This document shows positions 1,339-21,006 of a DNA stretch of 21,006 nt, piece after piece. Source of the stretch: Selaginella moellendorffii (lineage: Eukaryota > Plantae > Lycopodiophyta); contig NW_003314372.1 in assembly GCF_000143415.4 (NCBI RefSeq), forward strand, positions 498,894-519,899, read 5' to 3'. The notes beneath the pieces are model-generated. The model did not search any database. It saw only the letters and a program-made list of their open reading frames with translations, and had not been told where the DNA came from. A program made the position numbers and the translations under genes. How positions within the stretch are numbered: position 1 is the first letter of the stretch; every line of letters starts with the position of its first letter.

Positions 1339-1968
1339 TAGATCATCCTTAGGATGCTCGTAGATATAAGGAATAGCCTTCCCCAATATTCCTTTTTCTA
1401 TCCCCACCAAGTCCCTTTTAGTCCACAGTCGTGTTCACCAATATTGCCACTGGATTAAGGCCCACAAGCCTGACCACTATGTCCTAATAACCTCTAGAAC
1501 TCCCTTGCTGTATGACCGCATCCTTGGTCACCACACAAGTGGACTATCCCTCTTCCTTTCCACAGTCTGGGACTCTGGGATGACATTTCGAAACACCATG
1601 GCTTTACGGGAGCCTCATGGGTACTCTTCCCACTATCTGCCTTTGGGTGCCATAGACAGGTGGCTAGAGCGAGGTTTCAATGAGCCACACCAGGTATCCA
1701 AGTAGGTAATGCCACCCACACTTGTATTGGGAGCATTGACCATTCGATCTCCCAGGGGAGCTAGAGCCGACTCTTGAACATTTCACCATATTACCTTATT
1801 TATCTGTCTATATTTACTCTAGCCTTGGACTTGCCAATGGTTATATCATCACCCCACACGTGTGTATAGCCTTCTTGGGCTACACTAGCCTTTCTTGGCT
1901 AAACTGGCTCTATTGGGGTCCAACCCCCACACTCTCCTTACGATACTTTTGGAAACCCCCTGCAGCCT

Positions 1969-1987
1969 CCCCCCCCCCCCCCCCCCC
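1969..1987. repeat. C19 homopolymer (G19 on the minus strand)
   Basis: Seen directly; flanked by further C5 and G5 runs. Confidence 0.95.
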
Positions 1988-2038
1988 TTTGGGGGACAAT
2001 TGCTTTGGGCTTTCACCCAAAAACCTGTATTAGTATTC

Positions 2039-2362
2039 GGACTTGGACTTGGACTCGGTCTCAGTCTTGGTTCTAGTTTCAGATTTGAACTCAGTCCCGG
2101 TCTCAGTCTCGGTTCCATCTTGGACTCCATCTCGGGTCCATCTCGGACTCCATCTTGGACTCCATCTTGGACTCCATCTCGGACTCCATCTCGAGTCCAT
2201 CTTAGACTCCATTTGGGGTTTATCTCGGACTCTATCTCGCATTCATCTCAGACTCCATCTCGGGTCCATCTTGGACTCCATCTCAAGTCCATCTCGGACT
2301 CCATCTCAAGTCCATCTCAGACTCCATCAGAGGTCAATCTTAGACTCTATCTTGGACTCCAT
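2039..2362. repeat. Minisatellite: 6-bp GGACTY/RGTCTY units grading into about 21 units of 11-12 bp (TCCATCTYGGAC)
   Basis: Hexamer units 2039-2112; 12-mer units 2114-2362. Explains the low-complexity ORFs in several frames. Confidence 0.95.
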
Positions 2363-2481
2363 ATGTCATGTGTTGGTCCTCTTTTGTCTCTTTTCTAATG
2401 GCTCCACTTTGGGGCTTAGGTATTTTGTGTTTTAAACCCATGTTTCCGAGCATTTAAGGATGCTAAGATTGGGGTCATGGG

Positions 2482-4688: not shown

Positions 4689-4753
4689 GTGTGTATTTGT
4701 TTCTCTGTTTGCAAAGGTTTGAGAGGCTCACGGCTTTCTCTGTGTCGCCATAG

Positions 4754-4974
4754 TTGTGCTCGATGATCAGCGAGAACAGGCTCAACGCCTTCCAGACTTA
4801 CGTGGGGAACAAATCCGCCAGCATCCGCCTGCGCAGGTGCATTTGGTAGATCGACGTGCTCTGCTCGGAAATGCGACGAGGATTGGGAGTGAAAGGCGAA
4901 GAGGCTCTGATGGAGCGCACGACAGGGATGACGTCTCGGAAAATGAGGGTATTCACGTTGTCATCGATGACTAG
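4754..4974 (+). pseudogene. Terminal exon of an unidentified captured gene, copy 1
   Basis: Follows a catag acceptor. LCSMISENRLNAFQTY...IW*IDVLCSEMRR...IHVVIDD*, with an internal stop and a frameshift relative to the copy at 12586-12810. Confidence 0.65.
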
Positions 4975-5151
4975 AATCAAGGTTCTTCACTCTCTTGCTC
5001 GTTGCCATTCTTTTTTCGAGTCTCTCAAGTCCCTGTTTGTTCCAGGTTCTCGAGGCTGGAACCACGACTAGAATCAAGGTTTTTCACTCTCTTGCTCTTC
5101 GCTATTCAACTGGAAATATGGTTTTGATCATGTTTTGCTGGGATCGTGCAG

Positions 5152-6418
5152 GGACGTACATCTGGAGCAAGCCTGTGATGAAAGGAACGCACCCTTCTCC
5201 TCGGGACAGCCACAGCTCCACGGCCGTCGGGTCTAAGCTCTATGTGTTTGGTGGTACCGATGGAACCAGCCCGCTAGATGATCTCTTTGTTTTGGATACT
5301 GGTAAGCGAGTTCTATCAAATTTTTTTTCTTGTTCTTATCATCCAATGCAGCTACCAACACCTGGGGGAAACCCGACGTTTTTGGTGATGTTCCTGCTCC
5401 GAGAGAAGGACATAGCACATCTCTCATCGGTGACAACCTGTTAGTGTTTGGGGGATGTGGGAAATCCAGCGATCCCTCAGAGGAGGAGTACTACAACGAC
5501 CTCCATGTTTTGAACATGAGTAATATCCTGTTATCTTTCCTGGTTTTCTTCTAAACTCTTTTTTTTCCTGTAGATACTTTTTTCTGGAAGAAGATTTCTA
5601 CCACTGGAGTCTCGCCTATTCCTCGGGATATCCATAATAAGAACTGTTGCATTGTCATGGGTGGCAAGAACGGTGGTAATGCCTATCTATACGACATTCA
5701 TATTCTGGACACAGGTACATACATTGTGCTGGTTTTAAACTTGCGAATTCATTTGTGTTTCCAGAAACAATGGCATGGCGGGAGGTAAAGACGACTAGTG
5801 CCGAGCTGATGCCAAGAGCTGGTGAACGCAGGGCGAGGCATATTATTCTTCTATGGGGGATGTAACGAAGAGCTTGAAGCTCTGGATGACATGTATTTCC
5901 TCGACACAGGTTGGCTTCTTCTTTTATTGACATTGCTGCTGACAATATGGTTGCCGTTTTTCTGTGAAAAGATGCTGAGGGAGAAAGATCCATCAGAACC
6001 AAAGCTACCCATGCGTAAGGAACTTAAGAGAAGGCGGCAAGAGTATCGTGCCACGCCATTCGTGCTAGACAAGCAACGGGATGCGGACAAGAGCTTGGTT
6101 TCATCTCACGGAGGTATCTGCAGAAAACCTTGGACCTCTCCAAATTTTCTCTGTCAAACTCATGCTACAGAGTTTCAAGCTCACGTTCAGCCGCTAGGCG
6201 AGAAGATGTTCGAGGCTAAAGTAAGCGACGTATTCAACTACAGATACACGCTAGAAGCCTCCATCGATGGGAAGCTCTTCCGTGGGCTGCTCTTCTCGTA
6301 CAAGCCTGGCTTTGCTCAGGCAGTGCAATCTTACATCCTCAGTTACTCTCTAATGCCAGGAAGGAAAGCATCACAGGAGGAAACCACAGCACGTCCAAAA
6401 GGCCGTAGTAAAAGCTAA
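5152..6418 (+). pseudogene. Kelch-repeat (galactose oxidase/kelch superfamily) gene fragment, copy 1; 5'-truncated with internal deletions
   Basis: Kelch motifs PSPRDSHSSTAVGSKLYVFGG and PAPREGHSTSLIGDNLLVFGG; C-terminal FEAKVSDVFNYRYTLEASIDGKLFRGLLF; short GT-AG introns. Deletions near 5630 and 5822 relative to copy 2. Confidence 0.9.
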
Positions 6419-8136: not shown

Positions 8137-9218
8137 GCTCAGATGTAGTCTAAGATTTATGTAATATCATAAATTTTCTAACATTTTTTCTTACATTGTA
8201 ATTATACATGACAAAAATAATAACGTATAAATATCATTGAGACAACATTAGTACAAGAACCATCTAAAGAAATGTGATTCATCATCAATTGAACATTAAT
8301 TATATTAAATCTATCTATATACCATTTATGAATTTTCTGGTATATTATATTTTTAGAATAAAGAAAATTTTTATATATCATTATTACCTCAGTATAGAGT
8401 AAAACCTTGCCATTCATTTATCATTATAAAATTTCATCCTTTATAATATTGTAATAAAGCCTTAATTTTAAATATAAATCCATGAAAATAGAGAGATAAT
8501 AACTTATTTTACATTAGCATTCTCTCTATTAAAAAACACATACAGAAATAATGCTAATGATATAAAGTAGAATACTTCTAATATTAAATATTACTCTCAA
8601 AATATAAGAATATAAGTATTAGGAATAAGGGAATATCAAAGATAAATATGTAAAATTTTGAAATTTTTCTAAAAAAATATAACACATAAAGGTAATTTCT
8701 ATCACTTAGTATCATGCAATTCCAAAACTTTCAGTCTAAAGAGATGAAAAATAAAACTCAATAAAAATGGTTATATTTTTTAATTTTATAAGATGTATAT
8801 AGTTTAAGTGAGTTTTAAATCTTTATTTTTGAAACCATTATATTTTAGTGTACTTAAGAAACAAATTTTTTCAAGAGGAAAAATTGTAGATCAATTATAT
8901 GGAGATTTTAAATAAATAAAATAGTTACCAAGCCTCAATATTTAATTGACTCATCTGGCCATGGAATCCCACAGTGAAAAATTCCATTTATAGAAGATCA
9001 TGCAGCACTCAGAGTTTTAAATGTTATATTATGTTATAAGTTAAATTTATTATATTATTTATTATGTTATATTTTTAAAATGGATTTTGAATATAAATAT
9101 TATATTATGTTATGTTAACTATGTATGTAATAATTATGATTATATTAAAATTATAATTATGATTTCAAATTTTTGAAATACTAAAACATTAAGAATAAAC
9201 ATGATGCTCCCAGCGTAG
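8137..9218 (+). repeat. AT-rich Helitron 3' subterminal module, copy 1, truncated within the terminal hairpin
   Basis: Colinear with 10696-11811 from agatgtagtctaagatttat through atgctcccagcgtag. Confidence 0.9.
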
Positions 9219-9219
9219 A

Positions 9220-9538
9220 TATATTGGAAGTTTCAAACCAAATAATGAAAAATATGCAGCTTATTCACAATGAAATATTTTAGATACTGCTCAAGCAACG
9301 GAGATAAAAATCAAAAAACAAACACAATTCTAAATGCAATGAGCAACTAATGGGTGGTCTTGATAAATTATTAAAAGAGATAAATCCCTATACTAATGCA
9401 TTCACAATATTGTAAGAAATAGAGAATGAAGTGTTAAAATTAACAAATTTTCAAGGAGGCATAAATGATATCGTAATACATATAAAAGGCAATTAGACAA
9501 CTGATCCAAGATAATATAATGCACTAGGTTCAAATGAT
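9220..9538 (+). pseudogene. Helitron Rep/Helicase N-proximal remnant
   Basis: YIGSFKP..AYSQ*NILDTAQATE..(fs)NSKCNEQLMGGLDKLLKEINPYTNAF..TDPR*YNALGSND resembles Helitron RepHel motifs IGSLLP, YAQLYI.DT, L..NPY and D.RRYN.P..NE. Confidence 0.8.
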
Positions 9539-10695: not shown

Positions 10696-11811
10696 GCTAA
10701 GATGTAGTCTAAGATTTATATAATATCATAAATTTTCTACCACTTTATCCTACATTGCATTTATACATGAAAACATAATAAGGTATAAATATGATTGAGA
10801 TAACATTAGTACATGGACCATATACAGAATTTTAATTATATGATATTAAACCTATCTATATACCATTTATGAATTTTCTGATATATTATAGCTCTAGCAT
10901 AAAGTCAAGATTATATATCATCAAACCCTACTCTACCCCAGTATAGAGTAAAAAATTACCATTCATTTATCATCATAAAGTTTCAGCATTCATAACAGTG
11001 TTATAAAGCCTTAATTTTAAATATAAAAGCATGAATAAAAATAAATAATATTATTATTTTAGATTTATAAAAATAAATACAGAAATAATGTTTATGATAT
11101 ATAATAGAATACTTTCTATTTTAAATATTACTCTCAAAATGCATGAATATAAATATTAGGTAAAAAGGGAGTATCAATGATAAATATGTAAAATATTAAA
11201 AGTTTTTAAAAGAAAATATAACACATAAAGCTAACGTCTTTCACTTATTATTATGCAATTCCAAAACTTTCAGTCTGAAATGATGAATAGAGAAACTCCA
11301 TAACAATGTTTATATTTTTTAGATTTAAAAGATGTATGCACTTTAAGTGAGTTTTTAAATATATATTAAATATATTTTTAACATCATTATAATTGAGTGT
11401 ACCTAAGTAGCACATACTTTGTTAAGAGGAGTAATTATATAGTTTAATAAATCATCAAATAATAAGATTTTTATCAATTATATAGAGATTTCAAATAAAA
11501 GAAGAAATTAGTTAATAAAAAATGACTCATCTGGCCATGGGATCCCACAGTGAGAAATTCCATTTACAGAATATCCAAGACTTCAGTCAACAATCAGAAT
11601 TTTAAATATAATATAATGTACTGAGTTATATTTATTATGTTATGATGTTTGTTGGTGATGGAGTCAATTGTTGAAGATATTTTTAATATAAATATTATGT
11701 TATGTTTAACTATATATCTTATAATTATGATTATGTTAAAAATTACAAATACGCTTACAACTCTTTGAAATTATTAAAATATCAGAAATAAACACAATGC
11801 TCCCAGCGTAG
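10696..11811 (+). repeat. AT-rich Helitron 3' subterminal module, copy 2, complete
   Basis: Direct repeat of 8137-9218 leading into an intact terminus. Confidence 0.9.
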
Positions 11812-11828
11812 CTGGGACTTTTGCTAGT
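11801..11828 (+). mobile_element. Canonical Helitron 3' terminus
   Basis: TCCCAGC-GTA-GCTGGGA perfect 7-bp-stem hairpin (11801-11817), 6-nt spacer, CTAG (11824-11827), then T. Confidence 0.9.
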
Positions 11829-12270
11829 CCTTCTATATTTAAAAGAGTAAGGGCGACATATTCAATCGAGATTCTTTTCGAGCTTAATGGTGGAGATAAA
11901 GACACGTGGGAAAAACAGTTGAGAGTGGAATGCTTCACAAAATCCAACTGTCCAAATCTGTGACGATTGATATAGACGGCCAAGATGGCAATATGGGAGG
12001 TAATGTTTCAATTCTAGATTTGCAACCGCTCCATCGACTGGGAGGGAATGCTTTGCTTAAGTATGCTTTGCAGATTGATATGTAGATGGTACGTTTCATT
12101 TATCCTATTTCTAACCCTAGGAAGGGATTTGTCTCTGTTTGTAGAGTTCATAGAATTATCAAGTTCGTGAAGAAACGAGACACACTTATGGAAAAAGTAC
12201 TCAACAGAGAATATCATCTGGTAAAAGAGTCTCAACCCCCCTATCTTCGTCCCTGCAATTCTAACTTCAG

Positions 12271-12810
12271 ATGTTCCAGGATGACCAAGATATTCCGACC
12301 AAATGCAGCAACGGCAGAGCCTGGCGAGGGACCGAAAAACCTCCTACCAAAAGCCGCAACCTACATTTGTTCCTTATCCAACACCTTTGAGTAAGTTCCT
12401 TCGATTTAGACACTAGAAAAAACTCTAACGCGTTCTTTTTTGGACAGCTCCGGAAGAACTCCTGGGAACGGCACTGGATAACGATCCTAAGCGGCTGAAA
12501 GTCCCAGCCTATTACAACGAGGTTGTGTTTGTTTCTCCATTTGCAAAGGTTTGAGAGGCTCATGGCTTTCTCTGTGTCGCCATAGTTGTGCTGGATGATC
12601 AGCGAGAACAGGCTCGACGCCTTCCAGACTTACGCTGGGAAAAAAATTGCCAGCATCCGCCTGTGCAGGGGCATTCGACAGATCGACGTGCTCTGCTCGG
12701 AAATGCGACGAGGAATGGGAGTGAAAGGCGAAGAGGCTATGGTGGATGGAGCTCACGACAGGGACAACATCTCGGACAATGAGGGGATTCACGTTGGCAT
12801 CGATGACTAG
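12271..12810 (+). pseudogene. Three-exon 3' fragment of an unidentified gene, copy 2 (exons 12271-12390, 12448-12521, 12586-12810)
   Basis: Phase-compatible GT-AG splicing gives QMQQRQSLARDRKTSYQKPQPTFVPYPTPL-TPEELLGTALDNDPKRLKVPAYYNE-LCWMISENRLDAFQTY...VGIDD*; one early TGA in exon 1. Confidence 0.65.
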
Positions 12811-12845
12811 AATCAAGGTTCTTCACTCTTCTGGTGGGATCGCGC

Positions 12846-14185
12846 GTACACCTAGAGCAAGTGATGCAAGGAACACACCCTTCTCCTCGAGACAGCCACA
12901 ACTCAACGGCCGTCAGGCCTAAGCTCTATGTGTTTGGTGGTACCGATGGAACCAGCCCGCTCAACGATCTCTTTGTTTTGCATACTGGTAGGCTCCAAGT
13001 TCTATCGATTTTTTTTTCTTGTTCTTATCATCTGACGCAGCTACCAACACCTGGAGGAAACCCGACGTTTTTGGTGATGTTCCTGCTCCGAGAGAAGGAC
13101 ATAGCGCGTCTCTCATCGGTGACAACCTGTTCGTGTTTGGGGGATGTGGGAAATCCAGCGATCCCTCAGAGGAGTAGTACTACAACGACCTCCATGTTTT
13201 GAACAGGAGTAATATCCTGTTATCTTCCTTGTTTTCTTCTAAATTTTTTTTTTCTTGTAGATACTTTTGTCTGGAAGAAGATTTCTACCACTGGAGTCTC
13301 GCTTATTCCTCGGGATAGCCACACCTGCTCTTGCTATAAGAACTGTTTCGTTGTCATGGGTGGCGAGGACGGTGGTAATGCCTATCTAAACGACGTTTAT
13401 ATTCTGGACACAGGTACATACATTGTGCTGGTTTTAAACTTGCGAATTCATTTGCGTTTCCAGAAACAATGGCATGGCGGGAGGTAAAGACGACTGGTGC
13501 GGAGCTGATGCTAAGAGCCAGGCACACAACAATCAGCCATGGAAAGTACGTGAGTCTCTCATGGGGCTTTTACGTATTTTGTAGCAACTGGTGTTTGGGC
13601 AACTTCGAATCCCTCTGGTCCCGGGCCTTCTCCACGTTTCTCCCTTGCAGGAGATTCCGTGGACGCAGAGTGAGGCATATGATTCTTCTATGGGGGATGT
13701 AACGAAGAGCTTGAAGCTCTGGATGACATGTATTTCCTCGACACAGGTTGGCTTCTTCTTTAAATGACATTGCTGCCATTCTTGACAATATGGTTGCCGT
13801 TTTTCTGTGAAGAGATGCTGAGGGGGAAAGATCCATCAGAACCAAAGCTATCCATGTGTAAGGAACTTAAGAGAAGGTGGCAAGAGTATCGTGCCACGCC
13901 ATTCGTGCTAGACAAGCAACGGGATGCGGACAAGAGCTTGGTTTCATCTCACAGAGGTATCTGCAGAAAAACTTGGACCTCTCCAATTTTTCCCTGTCAA
14001 ACTCATGCTACAGAGTTTCAAGCTCATGTTCAGCTGCTAGGCGAGAAGATGTTCGAGGCTAGAGTAAGCGACATATTCAACTACAGATACATATTAGAAG
14101 CGTCCATCGATGGGAAGCTTTTCTGTGGGCTGCTCTTCTCGTACAAGCCTGGCTTTGCTCAGGCAGTGCAATCTTACATGGCGAG
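12846..14185 (+). pseudogene. Kelch-repeat gene fragment, copy 2
   Basis: Highly similar to copy 1; premature TAG at 13175-13177; last donor appears mutated (gag|at); 3' end replaced by P450 sequence. Confidence 0.9.
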
Positions 14186-16503: not shown

Positions 16504-17074
16504 AAATTATATTTTTGAAACCTAGATATTAAAGAACATAATACTAAAAATTATAAAATTTAATGTAATATACTACTATATCCATGAATAATTAAAAAGA
16601 AATTCTATATTGCAAGAACTACTGGTTTCTTCTAGCTCTATGAAATTTTTCACTTTATTAATACTATAGAATACCATTATCTAGATAAAATATAAAATCT
16701 ATTTTCAAGGTAAATTAGAAAAGAGAAACATAATTTCAGCTGGGATTGATATTATATTTAACATGGATGTTGTGGAAAATGCTAATCTTGAAGATTAAAA
16801 ATGATTTTTAAAATTATTCTGATTTGTTGAGGAAGATTTGCGAAGCACAAAGGCAAAACATAAAGACTTTCAGAAGCAAGTTGTAAGAATCTCAAGAGAA
16901 CTTAGGTTTACAACCAAACACATTTTATCGGCCCTTTACTAAACCGGCCATAGTCTATTGTTTAGCAAGATTGGCCAAAGTTAATGTTATAAGCCTCATT
17001 ATAATAAGAATCAAGCAGTGTCTACCTACTACCTTCTAAATCTCCTCAAAATCTGTGCATACTTGCACACATCT

Positions 17075-17174
17075 NNNNNNNNNNNNNNNNNNNNNNNNNN
17101 NNNNNNNNNNNNNNNNNNNNNNNNNNNNNNNNNNNNNNNNNNNNNNNNNNNNNNNNNNNNNNNNNNNNNNNNNN
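17075..17174. other. Assembly gap (100 N, true size unknown)
   Basis: Seen directly. Confidence 1.
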
Positions 17175-17262
17175 AATAAAGAGTAGGATCTTGAAAGGCT
17201 TCTTGAATGTTCTTTCCTTGCTGCTCTATCGTTATCTAGCATGTTAGATGAAAGTCTGTAAG

Positions 17263-17576
17263 AATTCACCAGCAATCGTCCAGTCTTGAGCATGTTGCTA
17301 CCAACTCTAAAGTCATGTACAGTTGACCAGCTTCTAGCTTTGTATGAGCACTGGGTCGTGGTGCAGGGATTTATCTGGGGAATCAACTCCTTCGATAATG
17401 GGGTGTGAACTCGGCAATGTAAACTTGGCTTTCCATTATCTGAAACTAATTGAAAATCCAATCTTTTCAGGTGCTTGCGCCCCGAGTTTGCATACAGATG
17501 AATGCTTCACAAACAAACGAAAGCCCATAGAATGATCTAATCATAGTTCACAATGCTGCTCAACAGTTATTTAAAG
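17263..17576 (+). pseudogene. PgiC: Cytosolic glucose-6-phosphate isomerase, two C-terminal exons (intron 17419-17470)
   Basis: [40 protein letters not shown](Q)WG(V)ELG|VLAPRV..MNASQT..LLNSYLK matches the PGI signature INSFDQWGVELGK; two 1-bp deletions. Missed by the ORF track. Confidence 0.9.
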
Positions 17577-17822
17577 GTGAGAGAACTTGGACAGAGCATG
17601 ACTTCATAACTTTTTGATAATGAGTGAGCTCTTGAGCTTTGCAGGTACATCATGGGTAAAGAACACATGCAATCCGTGCTGCAGCACAACCTGGCTTGCT
17701 GAGTAATATCTTATTGCCAAATGTAACGAAGGAAAATGATTTAAGATATTTGTGACAAAGTAAAGTATTGCAAGATAAAAGTTGGTTAGGGTTATCTTTA
17801 TAGTACATGGTTTCAGAACGAA

Positions 17823-19986
17823 ATGACTTCCTCTTTAGAAAATGGTGAGAGCCAGGAAACACGCAGGTTGCGTTTACATCAACCTTTGAGAATCCCTCGG
17901 AAAGAAGTTTCAGGTGCGATTTACAGCCCAGATGCCTATTATAAATTTGAAATGCTTTACAAATGTGTGTAAAATGATTCCTGTAGATTATAAAAGTGGA
18001 GAAGAAGTTGGACTAGAAGAGATTACAAAAGAGCAAAGCGAAAAGGGTAAGAGTTATCCAAACAAAAATTAATAATAAAAAGTTTCCTACTTGTAACATT
18101 TCCTTTTAGACATGGTAAATGAGACCCGAAGAAATGGTTCTTGTGACATGGAAGTGGACGACAAAGGTAGTGAAATTTATATTAAAAACTAAAGCTATCA
18201 TTATTTTATATACAATAGTGAAATCACATAGTGTTGAGGAAGAAAAGAAAACAGTAACTGATGAAGGTATGTTTAGTGTTTGTTCAGATATTTATTAATA
18301 ATAGTTGCCTTATAGAAGATAAAAAGGAAGAGTGCAAAGATGTACAAGAACAAAGAAAAGACAAAGTTAAAACACAAGGTATTTAACACTTAATAAAAGA
18401 AAAGAGAGTATATGTCTAACCAAAAATGGTTAATAGATGATGCAAATATTCATATTCAGAAGAAAAATGCTTTATTTCGTTAAAGTGGGACTTATTCAGT
18501 AAAGTGGGACATTAATTAGCATGTGTCCACATGCCATTTCCTAGTACTTAATTAATATTTATTAATATTTTTATCAGTTTTTTAATTTATTTTTTTATAT
18601 TTCACAATATTATAACACAAAATCATATGAAAAGTTTTTAATTTATAAATTATAAAGTTAAAACTTCAATTTTTTATTGTTGTTATAAAAATGGCATGTG
18701 GCCACACACCATAAGTGGGATAATGAAAAGTCCCACTTTAACGAAATAAAGCATAAAAGCAGACGCATGGATTTGGGTGAAGCTATTAGTATACGAGAAA
18801 TTGATCGAAGTGTGGCACAGCTAATGTTTGCTGGATACACTTTAAATAGTTATGGTTTGAGACGTGGTCGAACTCAGTCACATAATGTTCGTTTGAGGAT
18901 TGATATGACAGATGTTTATGGAAATGAGACTATTACAGTATGGATGTTCTACAACATTGCTGAAAAAAGGAAACAAGAATTCAGCAAAAACAAGTGGCTT
19001 AAGATATATGGCTTTGAAGTGATGAATGCTGACCCAAAATACGATCGTGGAACATGGAACTATACTCTTAAAATTTCTGAATCGACTATTGTAGAAGAAT
19101 TTCAGCATCCAGCACCAAGACTATGTTTGTTGGTTCACACTATACCAATTAGCGAATATATTGGCATTCACAAAGGTCGTGATTTTGTTGGTTCCATAGA
19201 TGCTGTTGTTATAAAGATTAATGATGCAACATACTCATGTGGCAAGTTAACTGTTGCTGATGGACCAAATGTTTGTGATGCCTTGACAGTATGTATAAAG
19301 ACTGTTGCTTATATTACTAACAAGAATGCTAATGTGTACAGATCAAATTTTTTGGCAAATCTATGCCTTACTTCGAAATACTAATGCAAGAATTCTATTC
19401 TGGAAATGCGCCTACAAGATGTTTCATCAATCTTCAGGGTGATGGCATTTTTAAACATGCAAATGCCACTGATATGACAATTATTACCGATGTTATCATT
19501 TGCGATAAAAAGAAATCTCTCGAATATCTGTTTTGTACAATTGCTGAGAACTTTGATGGGGTAAATATGAATTTCCTTTTATGTTTTGTGAATAGCTCTT
19601 AGTTGTTTATTATTTAGCAGGTCAAAGGTTGGTTTGAAATTGATAATTTGTATCCTGTATCTCTACAAACCACTTGCTCATCTTGTAATACTTTGGTTAC
19701 GAAACGGATTTCAAGGTTTGAAGCAGATTGTGAGTCTTGCACATATAAAGGACTTGTAAGGCAGCAAATTTCACTCAAGGGAAAATTACATAGTTCAGAA
19801 AGTGTTCAAGATGTCGTCATTCCTTCATATCTAATTGACCAATTATATCCTCAAGTGTCATCACTACAAGAACTTTGGAGAGAAGATTCTACAAAAGCAA
19901 AGATTCATATGGCTGGTAATCCCCCTCATGGTAGATTTGCAGTAGGAATAGGCAATGGTATTATGGGGTTTGCACCCAATAAATAA
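17823..19986 (+). CDS. RPA70-like ssDNA-binding protein (OB folds plus C4 Zn finger), 8 exons, about 487 aa, interrupted by a MITE in exon 6
   Basis: Exons 17823-17913, 17987-18046, 18110-18166, 18219-18266, 18316-18378, 18437-18466+18759-19288, 19342-19560, 19621-19986; all GT-AG and in frame (1464 nt). DBD-A-like IDMTDVYGNETITVWMF..AEK..ADPKYD..NYTLKISESTIVEE; DBD-B-like PISEY..FVGSIDAVV; CSSC-x14-CESC. Start codon inferred. Confidence 0.75.
18467..18754. mobile_element. 288-bp MITE with 27-bp perfect TIRs
   Basis: ATGCTTTATTTCGTTAAAGTGGGACTT (18467-18493) and its exact reverse complement (18728-18754); AAAA on both flanks; inner inverted repeat ccacatgccattt/aaatggcatgtgg; AT-rich core. 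Confidence 0.92.
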
Positions 19987-21006
19987 ATCAAAAGGAACAA
20001 GATGTTCTTATTAATTCTTGGTTGATGAATACATCTTTTGTGGATTTAGTTGTTCCAGTTTAGTTGTTTCAATGCAATAAAAAATTTCATATAATATGAT
20101 GCTTAGCCCAGCTTAAGATGACAAACTAAACCAGTGTTTCGTAGTAGACATAATCTGGTATGAGATAAGTTTTAGATATATAGTGTATTTTAAATAGGCA
20201 ACGTTCATTGTCAAGCTTTTGATCTTCATTTGCACACATGAATACATGAGTACTCTATCAAGCAGTTAATTTAAATACATAAACTCAAAGACACATGTTT
20301 CACAGGACCCTCTATAACTCTTTGAAAGAAATGTACTTGGAAATTTTCCATACAGTGATAGAAAACTCATCAGGCTCTTATAGTCCTACCTGAGTTCCAG
20401 TTTCGATTGTAAAATCTAGATCTTTTTATCCTCACTTGTTTTTTTTTTTTTTTACATTCACAATATCTGCTGATTCATCTTTCTGTCATACAGATCTTTG
20501 AGTTGGAAAAGAAATCCATTGCTGACAGTGTATTCGCTCAGAACCATCTGGATTTTTCTTATATTAAGAAGCTTGATGTCCCTGATACTCTTGACAAAAA
20601 ACAGTTCCATGCCTTGCACTTTTTATTTTCAGTTCCCGATCTTATACTGAAAGCCACAAATGATACAAGGATTTTTTATTATGTCCAGAGCTAACATAAC
20701 CAGTTCTTTTGCTTTCCAGGAACTTGAACAATCATCTGTAGAAGAACTCCTATTCCACCAAATTCCATTTTTCTTGAACAACAATCCATGTAACATCGGT
20801 TTATCTTGTCAAGCATTCCAAATATACCACTGAGAAAAGTAGTTTATTTACTAATGTGATGTAGTGTATAGAAGGGTAATGTCAAGGAAATTCAGAGAGT
20901 TTTGGAACTGGACTTTGAATCTGATTCTCACATACATTTTATAACATTGATGATTTATTTTGTTGATTTCCTTCAAGAACATTCAAATTAGGTGGGATGA
21001 GATAAA

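What the first reader, a model, noticed from the sequence alone, without database searches (positions are those of the whole stretch)
17823..19986. Divergent RPA70-like gene, intact apart from one MITE, amid decayed cargo
Seen: the ORF-track pieces assemble into one 8-exon frame of about 487 aa with no stop or frameshift once the MITE is removed, whereas every neighbouring fragment is broken. Known: angiosperm Helitrons carry RPA70-like genes. Inference: an element-encoded ssDNA-binding accessory protein that was recently functional, is very diverged from host RPA1, and has a charged leader in place of the RPA70N domain. It could be a lineage-specific Helitron SSB family or a domesticated one. 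Linkage to element B crosses an assembly gap.
Basis: partly seen in the sequence, partly recalled or inferred. Interest (0 to 1): 0.8.

Follow-up and report, generated by a model that had tools for sequence, protein, structure and literature searches.

The report
Divergent Helitron RPA70-like gene, Selaginella
This is a real eight-exon gene for a very diverged RPA70-type single-stranded-DNA-binding protein carried by rolling-circle (Helitron) transposons of the lycophyte Selaginella, knocked out here only by a recent 288-bp miniature transposon; it is a new, unannotated member of a known kind of transposon accessory gene.

Summary
Window 17823-19986 (+) splices through seven GT..AG introns into one open frame. 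Precise removal of a 288-bp TIR element (18467-18754, 4-bp AAAA duplication) leaves exactly 487 codons. A sister copy in public Selaginella moellendorffii DNA (L003, 95-97% identical) has the empty site.

- An exhaustive HMMER search found four relatives, all uncharacterised S. moellendorffii proteins.
- Pfam gives only sub-threshold DUF223 hits.
- Structure supports RPA70. The ESM Atlas model of homologue P0004 matches only RPA70/DUF223/MEIOB-type tandem OB proteins. An AF2 model of the C-terminal domain, built from a family-only alignment, matches RPA70 DBD-C with its zinc ribbon (Foldseek, VIA, Atlas).
- In three of five public loci the gene lies 3-5 kb downstream of, and co-oriented with, a Helitron RepHel. 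One element also carries a canonical, multicopy RPA70-like gene.
- Selection is purifying: pN/pS is 0.34 against the sister copy, and synonymous sites are saturated against distant paralogues.

The host is a lycophyte, not an angiosperm. One paper reported plant Helitron RPAs only in angiosperms.

Another first-stage note (s1-408452) describes a similar module elsewhere in this genome.

The parts
17823..17913 (+). Exon 1 (ATG; start of the charged leader)
   Evidence: GT donor at 17914. Matches the start of P0005.
17987..18046 (+). Exon 2 (60 nt, phase 1/1)
   Evidence: AG..GT.
18110..18166 (+). Exon 3 (57 nt, phase 1/1)
   Evidence: AG..GT.
18219..18266 (+). Exon 4 (48 nt, phase 1/1)
   Evidence: AG..GT.
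18316..18378 (+). Exon 5 (63 nt, phase 1/1)
   Evidence: AG..GT.
18437..18466 (+). Exon 6, part upstream of the insertion. Its last four bases (AAAA) are the target site.
18467..18754 (.). 288-bp non-autonomous TIR element (MITE), superfamily not assigned. It has perfect 27-nt TIRs and a 4-bp AAAA target duplication (18463-66 and 18755-58). It puts a TAA in frame at 18481-83.
   Evidence: TIRs. (empty site in L003). (another copy, 98% identical, at L005 1-150).
18755..19288 (+). Exon 6, part downstream of the insertion (18755-58 is the second AAAA copy). Encodes the first OB fold (DBD-A-like) and the first half of the second.
   Evidence: Pfam DUF223 E 0.036. 54-58% identity to P0001, P0002 and P0004. 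Structure matches of P0004.
19342..19560 (+). Exon 7: rest of the second OB fold and the linker
   Evidence: 53-nt intron 19289-19341 with TACTAAC. Collinear with P0002-P0004.
19621..19986 (+). Exon 8: third OB fold with a CxxC-x14-CxxC zinc ribbon (DBD-C-like), then stop TAA
   Evidence: AF2 model of homologue P0002:160-311 matches RPA70 DBD-C. hhalign aligns the second Cys of the first pair and the whole second CxxC pair.
17075..17174 (.). Assembly gap (100 N) between the gene and the rest of element B
   Evidence: The sister copy L003 is collinear on both sides, with about 82 bp between.
11802..11845 (+). Head-to-tail Helitron junction. The 3' hairpin CCCAGC-GTA-GCTGGG and CTAG of element A are followed directly by the 5' end TCCTTCTATATTTAAAAG of element B.
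12111..14179 (+). Kelch-repeat gene fragment near the 5' end of element B. The same fragment lies upstream of RepHel in L002.

Best explanation
The locus is a copy of an accessory gene of a canonical (HLE1-type) Helitron family of Selaginella.

The protein has three parts after a charged, E/K/D-rich leader of about 118 residues:
- two tandem OB folds, like RPA70 DBD-A and DBD-B;
- a third OB fold interrupted by a four-cysteine zinc ribbon, like RPA70 DBD-C.

It has no RPA70N domain, and the sequence ends just after the last strand of the third OB fold.

By inference from RPA70 and from the rolling-circle model of Helitron transposition, it binds the single strand that RepHel nicks and unwinds, and protects or hands over that intermediate.

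This copy sits in a RepHel-less derivative element. It stayed under purifying selection until recently and was then disrupted by a 288-bp TIR element in exon 6.

Shown here: the gene structure, the insertion with its empty site, family membership, the fold resemblance (on homologues 48-58% identical), co-occurrence with RepHel, and purifying selection.

Inferred: ssDNA binding and a role in transposition.
For: Gene and insertion.

Family: the word search found two relatives. An exhaustive phmmer search with P0002 over 1.84e9 representatives found four, all S. moellendorffii 'hypothetical proteins'.

OB folds 1 and 2:
- Pfam DUF223 at E 0.018, 0.036 and 0.089 in the same register in three members.
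- A family profile against PDB gives yeast RPA1 DBD-A (1ynx) among only two hits, E 1.3.
- hhalign of domain A against RPA DBD-A gives P 0.019.
- The ESM Atlas model of P0004 (pLDDT 0.66) has 10 of 10 nearest sets in RPA70/DUF223/MEIOB, with TM by query 0.53-0.66 over 230-253 residues.

OB fold 3:
- AF2 model built from a family-only alignment, core pLDDT 63-85.
- The top 17 Foldseek PDB ranks listed are RPA70 DBD-C, Teb1 OB-C or archaeal RPA; the best is 1l1o_F, E 1.8e-3.
- VIA gives Z 6.4-7.9 over 120-133 of 152 residues. The first rows outside the RPA/CST/RMI OB group score Z 4.1 or lower.
- The Atlas shape search returns RPA or archaeal RPA-type SSB clusters in all 10 rows, 8 of them with a Rep_fac-A_C label, TM 0.57-0.66.
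- hhalign of domain C against DBD-C gives P 0.015, with the second Cys of the first pair and the second CxxC pair aligned.

Helitron link:
- tblastn places RepHel on the same strand, ending about 3-5 kb upstream of the gene, in L001, L002 and L005 (Pfam).
- In L005 the gene lies between a candidate 5' end at 1006 and a hairpin plus CTAG at 21295.
- 3' ends lie downstream of the gene in L003 (17709) and L004 (12752).

Selection:
- Against L003 there are 13 synonymous and 17 nonsynonymous changes, pN/pS 0.34, with flanks 3.1-3.7% diverged.
- Against distant paralogues pS is about 0.8 (saturated) and pN about 0.33.
Against: - No Pfam family reaches its gathering score: DUF223 gives 14.8 bits against a cut-off of 24.6, and there is no Rep_fac-A_C or REPA_OB_2 hit.
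- Profile-profile comparison with the co-resident canonical RPA70-like genes is not significant on whole proteins and only marginal by domain. The middle domain gives nothing.
- AF2 on the 368-residue homologue failed (pLDDT 36).
- The structural evidence rests on homologues 48-58% identical, not on the window's own spliced product. The VIA Z values fall in the range the tool calls 'middling'.
- The window's element has no RepHel. The gene is separated from the element's 5' part by an assembly gap and about 2 kb with no match in the sister copy.
- ssDNA binding is untested.
Confidence: 0.8

Rival explanations
1. The gene is a domesticated host gene. It was derived from a Helitron RPA-like gene and now serves the plant, which keeps it independently of any element.
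For: The window, L003 and L004 copies have no RepHel within 10 kb. Purifying selection acted between the window and L003 copies.
Against: - The family is multicopy. Several copies are broken: stops in L001 and L004, a frameshift in L003, truncation in L002, and the insertion here.
- Copies lie upstream of Helitron 3' ends and downstream of RepHel in three loci.
- No syntenic single-copy locus was seen.
Confidence: 0.06
2. The gene is captured cargo. A host OB-fold gene of another function (MEIOB, CST or Teb1 type) was picked up by one Helitron lineage and plays no part in transposition.
For: Protein-language-model neighbours include MEIOB and hold'em clusters at the same score as RPA70. CTC1 and Teb1 OB domains are among the structural matches. 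These elements do capture host fragments, such as the Kelch pieces.
Against: - The gene keeps its position and orientation next to RepHel in three element lineages whose RepHel proteins are only 67-77% identical.
- Synonymous sites are saturated while pN is about 0.33. That is long-term constraint inside the element, unlike the decayed Kelch cargo.
- No host counterpart turned up in 1.84e9 representatives.
Confidence: 0.08
3. The open frame is a chance or annotation artefact, not a gene.
For: None beyond the absence of any significant family hit.
Against: - 487 codons stay open across eight exons with GT..AG introns.
- Relatives match at E 1e-41 to 1e-45.
- The last two introns sit at the same positions in paralogues.
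- There are fewer nonsynonymous changes than neutrality predicts.
Confidence: 0.01

Closest known systems
Plant Helitron RPA-like proteins (PHRPA; Pfam DUF223 / REPA_OB_2 / Rep_fac-A_C architectures). Sources: Kapitonov & Jurka 2001 and 2007, from my own knowledge; Roffler, Menardo & Wicker 2015, PMC4683698.
   Same: - A multi-exon gene inside a Helitron, downstream of and co-oriented with RepHel. HELIANO reports this position for RPA in HLE1 elements (PMC11417382).
- Three OB folds, the last with a zinc ribbon, and no RPA70N domain.
- RepHel-less 'mother' elements that keep the RPA gene are known (Mothra, PMC4683698).
- The best weak Pfam hit is DUF223. Two of the Atlas structure-neighbour clusters of P0004 are mostly DUF223 proteins.
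   Different: - It fails every Pfam threshold.
- It is found only in Selaginella, a lycophyte, whereas PMC4683698 reported PHRPAs only in monocots and dicots.
- It has a long charged leader.
- In at least one element (L005) it coexists with a second, canonical RPA70-like gene.
Cellular RPA70 (RPA1), DBD-A/B/C (PDB 1l1o, 4gop, 8rk2, 1ynx)
   Same: - The order of the three OB folds.
- A CxxC...CxxC zinc ribbon inserted in the third OB fold.
- The C-domain model superposes on RPA70 residues about 452-600 at Z about 7.
   Different: - About 12% identity in the structural alignments.
- No RPA70N domain.
- The protein ends right after the last strand of the third OB fold. The segment that follows that strand in host RPA70s in the alignment is missing. 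From my own knowledge, that segment is the helix RPA70 uses to join RPA32 and RPA14, so a canonical heterotrimer is doubtful (inference).
- It is multicopy and transposon-borne.
The canonical RPA70-like genes of S. moellendorffii Helitrons (P0007-P0021; NCBI names such as 'replication protein A 70 kDa DNA-binding subunit E-like')
   Same: Same genome and, in L005, apparently the same element (also close by in L001). They too end without the C-terminal segment of host RPA70.
   Different: They hit REPA_OB_2 (E 1.9e-19) and Rep_fac-A_C (E 2.2e-29) strongly and are 26-29% identical to algal RPA70. The family studied here shows no significant sequence relation to them.

Membership tests
RPA70-like / plant Helitron RPA | Tandem OB folds equivalent to DBD-A and DBD-B | tested here: met
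   Tested on homologue P0004 (54% identical to the window's exon 6). Its ESM Atlas model has 10 of 10 nearest structure sets in RPA70/DUF223/MEIOB, TM 0.53-0.66 over 230-253 residues. Weak DUF223 and 1ynx sequence hits fall in one register. Not tested on the window's own joined product.
RPA70-like / plant Helitron RPA | C-terminal OB fold with a four-Cys zinc ribbon (Rep_fac-A_C type) | tested here: met
   All four Cys are present in window exon 8. The AF2 model of P0002:160-311 matches RPA70 DBD-C in PDB and RPA-type clusters, mostly labelled Rep_fac-A_C, in the Atlas.
RPA70-like / plant Helitron RPA | Sequence match to Pfam DUF223, REPA_OB_2 or Rep_fac-A_C at the curated threshold | tested here: not met
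   DUF223 scores 13.6-15.8 bits against a cut-off of 24.6. There is no hit to the other two. Membership therefore rests on fold and context, not on sequence.
RPA70-like / plant Helitron RPA | Encoded inside a Helitron, next to RepHel | tested here: met
   Met for the family: L001, L002 and L005. For the window copy itself it is inconclusive. The gene lies 3' of the element B 5' end at 11828, but there is no RepHel, there is a gap at 17075-17174, and the 3' end lies beyond the window.
RPA70-like / plant Helitron RPA | Binds single-stranded DNA | not testable with these tools
   Needs a binding assay with a purified intact member.
Cellular RPA70 (host RPA1) | RPA70N domain and the C-terminal helix that joins RPA32 and RPA14 | tested here: not met
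   The N-terminus is a charged leader with no Pfam hit. The sequence ends after the last OB strand: structural alignments stop at RPA70 residue about 600, and host sequences continue beyond that point.
Canonical Helitron (HLE1) | 5' TC, 3' hairpin plus CTRR, insertion between A and T | tested here: met
   Window 11802-11827 has the hairpin and CTAG, followed by TCCTTC. In L003, L004 and L005 the CTAG is followed by T. The L005 candidate 5' end is preceded by A but starts TA rather than TC.
MITE (non-autonomous TIR transposon) | Terminal inverted repeats, target-site duplication, no coding capacity, several copies | tested here: met
   27-nt perfect TIRs. A 4-bp AAAA duplication, shown by the empty site in L003. 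288 bp and AT-rich. A second copy is 98% identical. The superfamily was not assigned.

The most novel reading that the evidence does not exclude
This family may be the lycophyte branch of the DUF223-type plant Helitron RPA lineage. If so, Helitron RPAs predate angiosperms by hundreds of millions of years. That would go against the proposal that they entered the common ancestor of monocots and dicots by horizontal transfer (PMC4683698). In addition, Selaginella Helitrons that carry two very different RPA70-like genes might encode their own two-subunit ssDNA-binding complex, independent of host RPA32 and RPA14.
Probability: 0.3. Interest if true: 0.55.

Novelty: new member of a known kind. Interest (0 to 1): 0.35.

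Why it matters
Helitron RPA-like genes are the least understood part of the plant Helitron machinery. This family shows three things.
- Such genes can drift beyond the reach of Pfam while staying under selection.
- Lycophyte Helitrons carry them, whereas one study found them only in angiosperms.
- One element can hold two very different RPA70-like genes.

It also gives public 'hypothetical proteins' a likely identity: SELMODRAFT_430653, 427832, 412542, 417575 and 432233. It suggests too that several S. moellendorffii genes named 'replication protein A 70 kDa subunit' are transposon genes.

Tried and rejected
- AF2 on the 368-residue homologue P0004 with a 7-row alignment gave pLDDT 36 and was unusable.
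- hhalign of the whole-family alignment against the Selaginella canonical RPA70-like alignment gave no relation, probability 0.1. By domain it was only marginal, P about 0.02 for A against A and C against C, with nothing for the middle domain.
- A family-profile search of PDB sequences gave only two hits at E about 1.
- P0006, the fifth hit of the exhaustive search, is a 1261-residue repetitive metagenomic protein at 26% identity. I treat it as a low-complexity false positive.
- In-frame splicing around the TIR element: by hand I found no GT..AG pair around it that restores the frame, so the insertion is disabling.
- Searches of the scan's own notes by sequence returned nothing.
Exons were searched one by one by reference, and the natural database proteins P0002 and P0004 served as full-length proxies.

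Full report
**What is there**

Window 17823-19986 on the + strand holds an ATG, eight exons and a TAA. The exons are:
- E1 17823-17913
- E2 17987-18046
- E3 18110-18166
- E4 18219-18266
- E5 18316-18378
- E6 18437-19288, interrupted by the insertion
- E7 19342-19560
- E8 19621-19986

All seven introns are 49-73 nt and GT..AG. The first five junctions are phase 1. Intron 6 (19289-19341) has a TACTAAC branch site.

**The insertion in exon 6**

Exon 6 is interrupted at 18467-18754 by a 288-bp AT-rich element with perfect 27-nt terminal inverted repeats. AAAA lies on both sides. Read as it stands, the frame hits TAA at 18481-83. By hand I found no GT..AG pair around the element that restores the frame.

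Removing the element and one AAAA (292 nt) leaves 1461 coding nt, or 487 codons.

**The empty site and the source organism**

An exhaustive HMMER search returned P0005, which is SELMODRAFT_430653 of Selaginella moellendorffii. Its locus is L003, on GL377700.1.
- L003 aligns with window 16826-21006 at 95-97% identity.
- It lacks the element and reads CAGAAG-AAAA-GCAGACGC at that point.
- It is collinear across the window's 100-N gap.

The window's Kelch fragments match another S. moellendorffii scaffold at 86-98%. The window is therefore from this species or a very close relative. It is a lycophyte, not an angiosperm.

The L003 copy is itself dead. It has a 1-nt deletion in exon 6 and a 35-nt deletion in intron 4. 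That explains the odd public gene model.

A second copy of the TIR element, 98% identical, lies at L005 1-150. The element family was therefore active recently.

**The family**

I never built, searched or folded a joined protein.
- The 178-residue translation of exon 6 downstream of the insertion found two S. moellendorffii hypothetical proteins at 57-58% identity.
- phmmer with P0002 against 1.84e9 representatives found four true relatives, all from the same species and all unnamed.
- The exon translations align collinearly with P0002, P0003 and P0004, including across both C-terminal splice junctions.
- tblastn finds the same three C-terminal exons, with introns at the same places, in L001, L004 and L005.
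- Most copies carry a lesion. L001 and L004 have stops, L002 is truncated and L003 has a frameshift.
- Over those three exons, L005 is the only public copy without a stop or frameshift.

**Is it RPA70-like? Sequence evidence**

Sequence evidence alone is weak but consistent.
- Pfam DUF223, the first OB fold of plant Helitron RPA-like proteins, hits three members at E 0.018-0.089 in one register. All three are below threshold.
- A family profile against PDB gives two hits. One is yeast RPA1 DBD-A (1ynx, E 1.3), in the same register.
- Domain-wise hhalign against an RPA70 alignment gives its best values on the collinear pairs: A against DBD-A at P 0.019 and C against DBD-C at P 0.015. The second Cys of the first pair and the whole second CxxC pair are aligned.
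- The middle domain gives nothing.
- Whole-protein hhalign against the Selaginella canonical RPA70-like genes gives nothing.

**Is it RPA70-like? Structural evidence**

Structure is clearer.
- The ESM Atlas holds its own model of P0004 (pLDDT 0.66). All ten nearest structure sets are RPA70, DUF223 or MEIOB-type proteins, with TM by query 0.53-0.66 over 230-253 residues. One cluster has members that carry both DUF223 and Helitron_like_N.
- My first AF2 run, on whole P0004, failed (pLDDT 36).
- The second run covered the C-terminal domain P0002:160-311 with a six-row, family-only alignment. It gave pLDDT 60.6 overall and 63-85 in the core.
- For that model, the top 17 Foldseek PDB ranks listed are RPA70 DBD-C, Teb1 OB-C or archaeal RPA. 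The best is 1l1o_F at E 1.8e-3.
- VIA-align gives Z 6.4-7.9 over 120-133 of 152 residues. The first rows outside the RPA/CST/RMI OB group score Z 4.1 or lower.
- The Atlas shape search returns RPA or archaeal RPA-type SSB clusters in all ten rows, eight of them with a Rep_fac-A_C label, at TM 0.57-0.66.

The caveat is that it was tested on homologues 48-58% identical to the window's exons.

**How it differs from cellular RPA70**

The N-terminal 118 or so residues are a charged E/K/D-rich leader with no domain hit. The protein ends just after the last strand of the third OB fold. Structural alignments stop at RPA70 residue about 600. Host RPA70 sequences continue beyond that point. From my own knowledge, the missing segment is the helix that joins RPA70 to RPA32 and RPA14. 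A canonical heterotrimer therefore seems unlikely, but this is inference.

**Link to Helitrons**

- In L001, L002 and L005, tblastn and Pfam place a RepHel (Helitron_like_N E 7.6e-39, PIF1 E 7.9e-37) on the same strand, ending about 3-5 kb upstream of the family gene.
- The three RepHel proteins are only 67-77% identical, so these are distinct element lineages.
- In L005 the gene lies between a candidate 5' end at 1006 and a hairpin plus CTAG at 21295. That 5' end resembles the window's TCCTTCTATATTTAAAAG but starts TA rather than TC.
- The same 20-kb interval in L005 holds a canonical RPA70-like gene with REPA_OB_2 and Rep_fac-A_C.
- A related canonical gene lies downstream of the family gene in L001. 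It is present on many scaffolds at 96-100% identity, so it too is probably transposon-borne.
- L003 and L004 have Helitron 3' ends downstream of the gene, at 17709 and 12752.

In the window, element A ends at 11827 (hairpin plus CTAG) and element B starts at 11828. Element B carries the same Kelch fragment that sits upstream of RepHel in L002. It has no RepHel; the only Rep trace in the window is at 9407-9535, in element A.

The window copy is best read as the accessory gene of a RepHel-deleted derivative. This resembles the rice 'Mothra mother element', which keeps its RPA gene but lacks RepHel (PMC4683698). The link remains indirect because of the gap and about 2 kb upstream of 16826 that has no match in L003.

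**Selection**

- Against L003 there are 13 synonymous and 17 nonsynonymous differences (pS 0.044, pN 0.015, ratio 0.34). Neutrality predicts about 6 and 24. Flanks differ by 3.1-3.7%.
- Against distant paralogues, synonymous sites are saturated (pS about 0.8) and pN is about 0.33.

The family has been kept as a protein throughout the divergence of these element lineages, and this copy was constrained until recently.

**Comparison with what is known**

RPA70-like genes in plant Helitrons are long known (my own knowledge, and PMC4683698). HELIANO reports RPA domains enriched downstream of RepHel in HLE1 elements (PMC11417382), which is the arrangement seen here.

Three points are new.
- This family lies outside Pfam thresholds and is known only from Selaginella.
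- It coexists with a canonical RPA70-like gene in at least one element.
- The host is a lycophyte, whereas PMC4683698 reported Helitron RPAs only in monocots and dicots and proposed horizontal transfer into their common ancestor.

That tree is the main next step.

A first-stage note on another piece of this genome (s1-408452) describes a module of an unknown ORF, RPA70, a second Zn-ribbon/OB gene and RepHel. It agrees with what I saw in L005, and partly in L001.

**Verdict**

This is a new, very diverged member of a known kind of transposon accessory gene. Interest is moderate.

Noticed in passing
window 11802-11845: Two Helitrons abut head to tail. The hairpin CCCAGC-GTA-GCTGGG and CTAG are followed at once by TCCTTCTATATTTAAAAG, the 5' end of the next element.
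   Followed up: partly
window 4692-6336 and 12524-14179; L002 1-1213: Two copies of a Kelch-repeat gene fragment, 90-94% identical to each other and 86-98% to a Kelch gene model that lies upstream of RepHel in L002. This looks like cargo captured by this Helitron lineage near its 5' end.
   Followed up: partly
L001 17781-21088; L005 18009-20090; proteins P0007-P0021: A canonical RPA70-like gene (REPA_OB_2 plus Rep_fac-A_C) lies a few kb from the family gene. It occurs on many S. moellendorffii scaffolds at 96-100% identity. NCBI names some copies 'replication protein A 70 kDa DNA-binding subunit C' or 'E-like'. They are probably Helitron genes rather than host RPA1 paralogues.
   Followed up: partly
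L003 10001-11835 (SELMODRAFT_430653): The public gene model of the sister copy skips exons 3 and 5 and switches frame in exon 6. The locus has a 1-nt deletion and a 35-nt deletion in intron 4, so it is a pseudogene annotated as a protein.
   Followed up: yes
L001 12986-14712: A MORC-type gene model (HATPase_c_3, Morc6_S5) sits between the family gene and the canonical RPA70-like gene. I did not settle whether it is Helitron cargo or a host gene.
   Followed up: no
window 1895-2435: A GC-rich stretch with overlapping 130-167-codon ORFs made of short tandem repeats (LGLHLG / SRTPS-like; self-matches at 2085-2365). No Pfam hit.
   Followed up: no
window 8137-9218 and 10696-11811; L003 16984-17710: The AT-rich last 0.7-1.1 kb before the Helitron 3' end is repeated inside element A and is shared with the 3' end of the L003 element. 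The first copy runs into a Rep N-terminal remnant at 9407-9535.
   Followed up: partly
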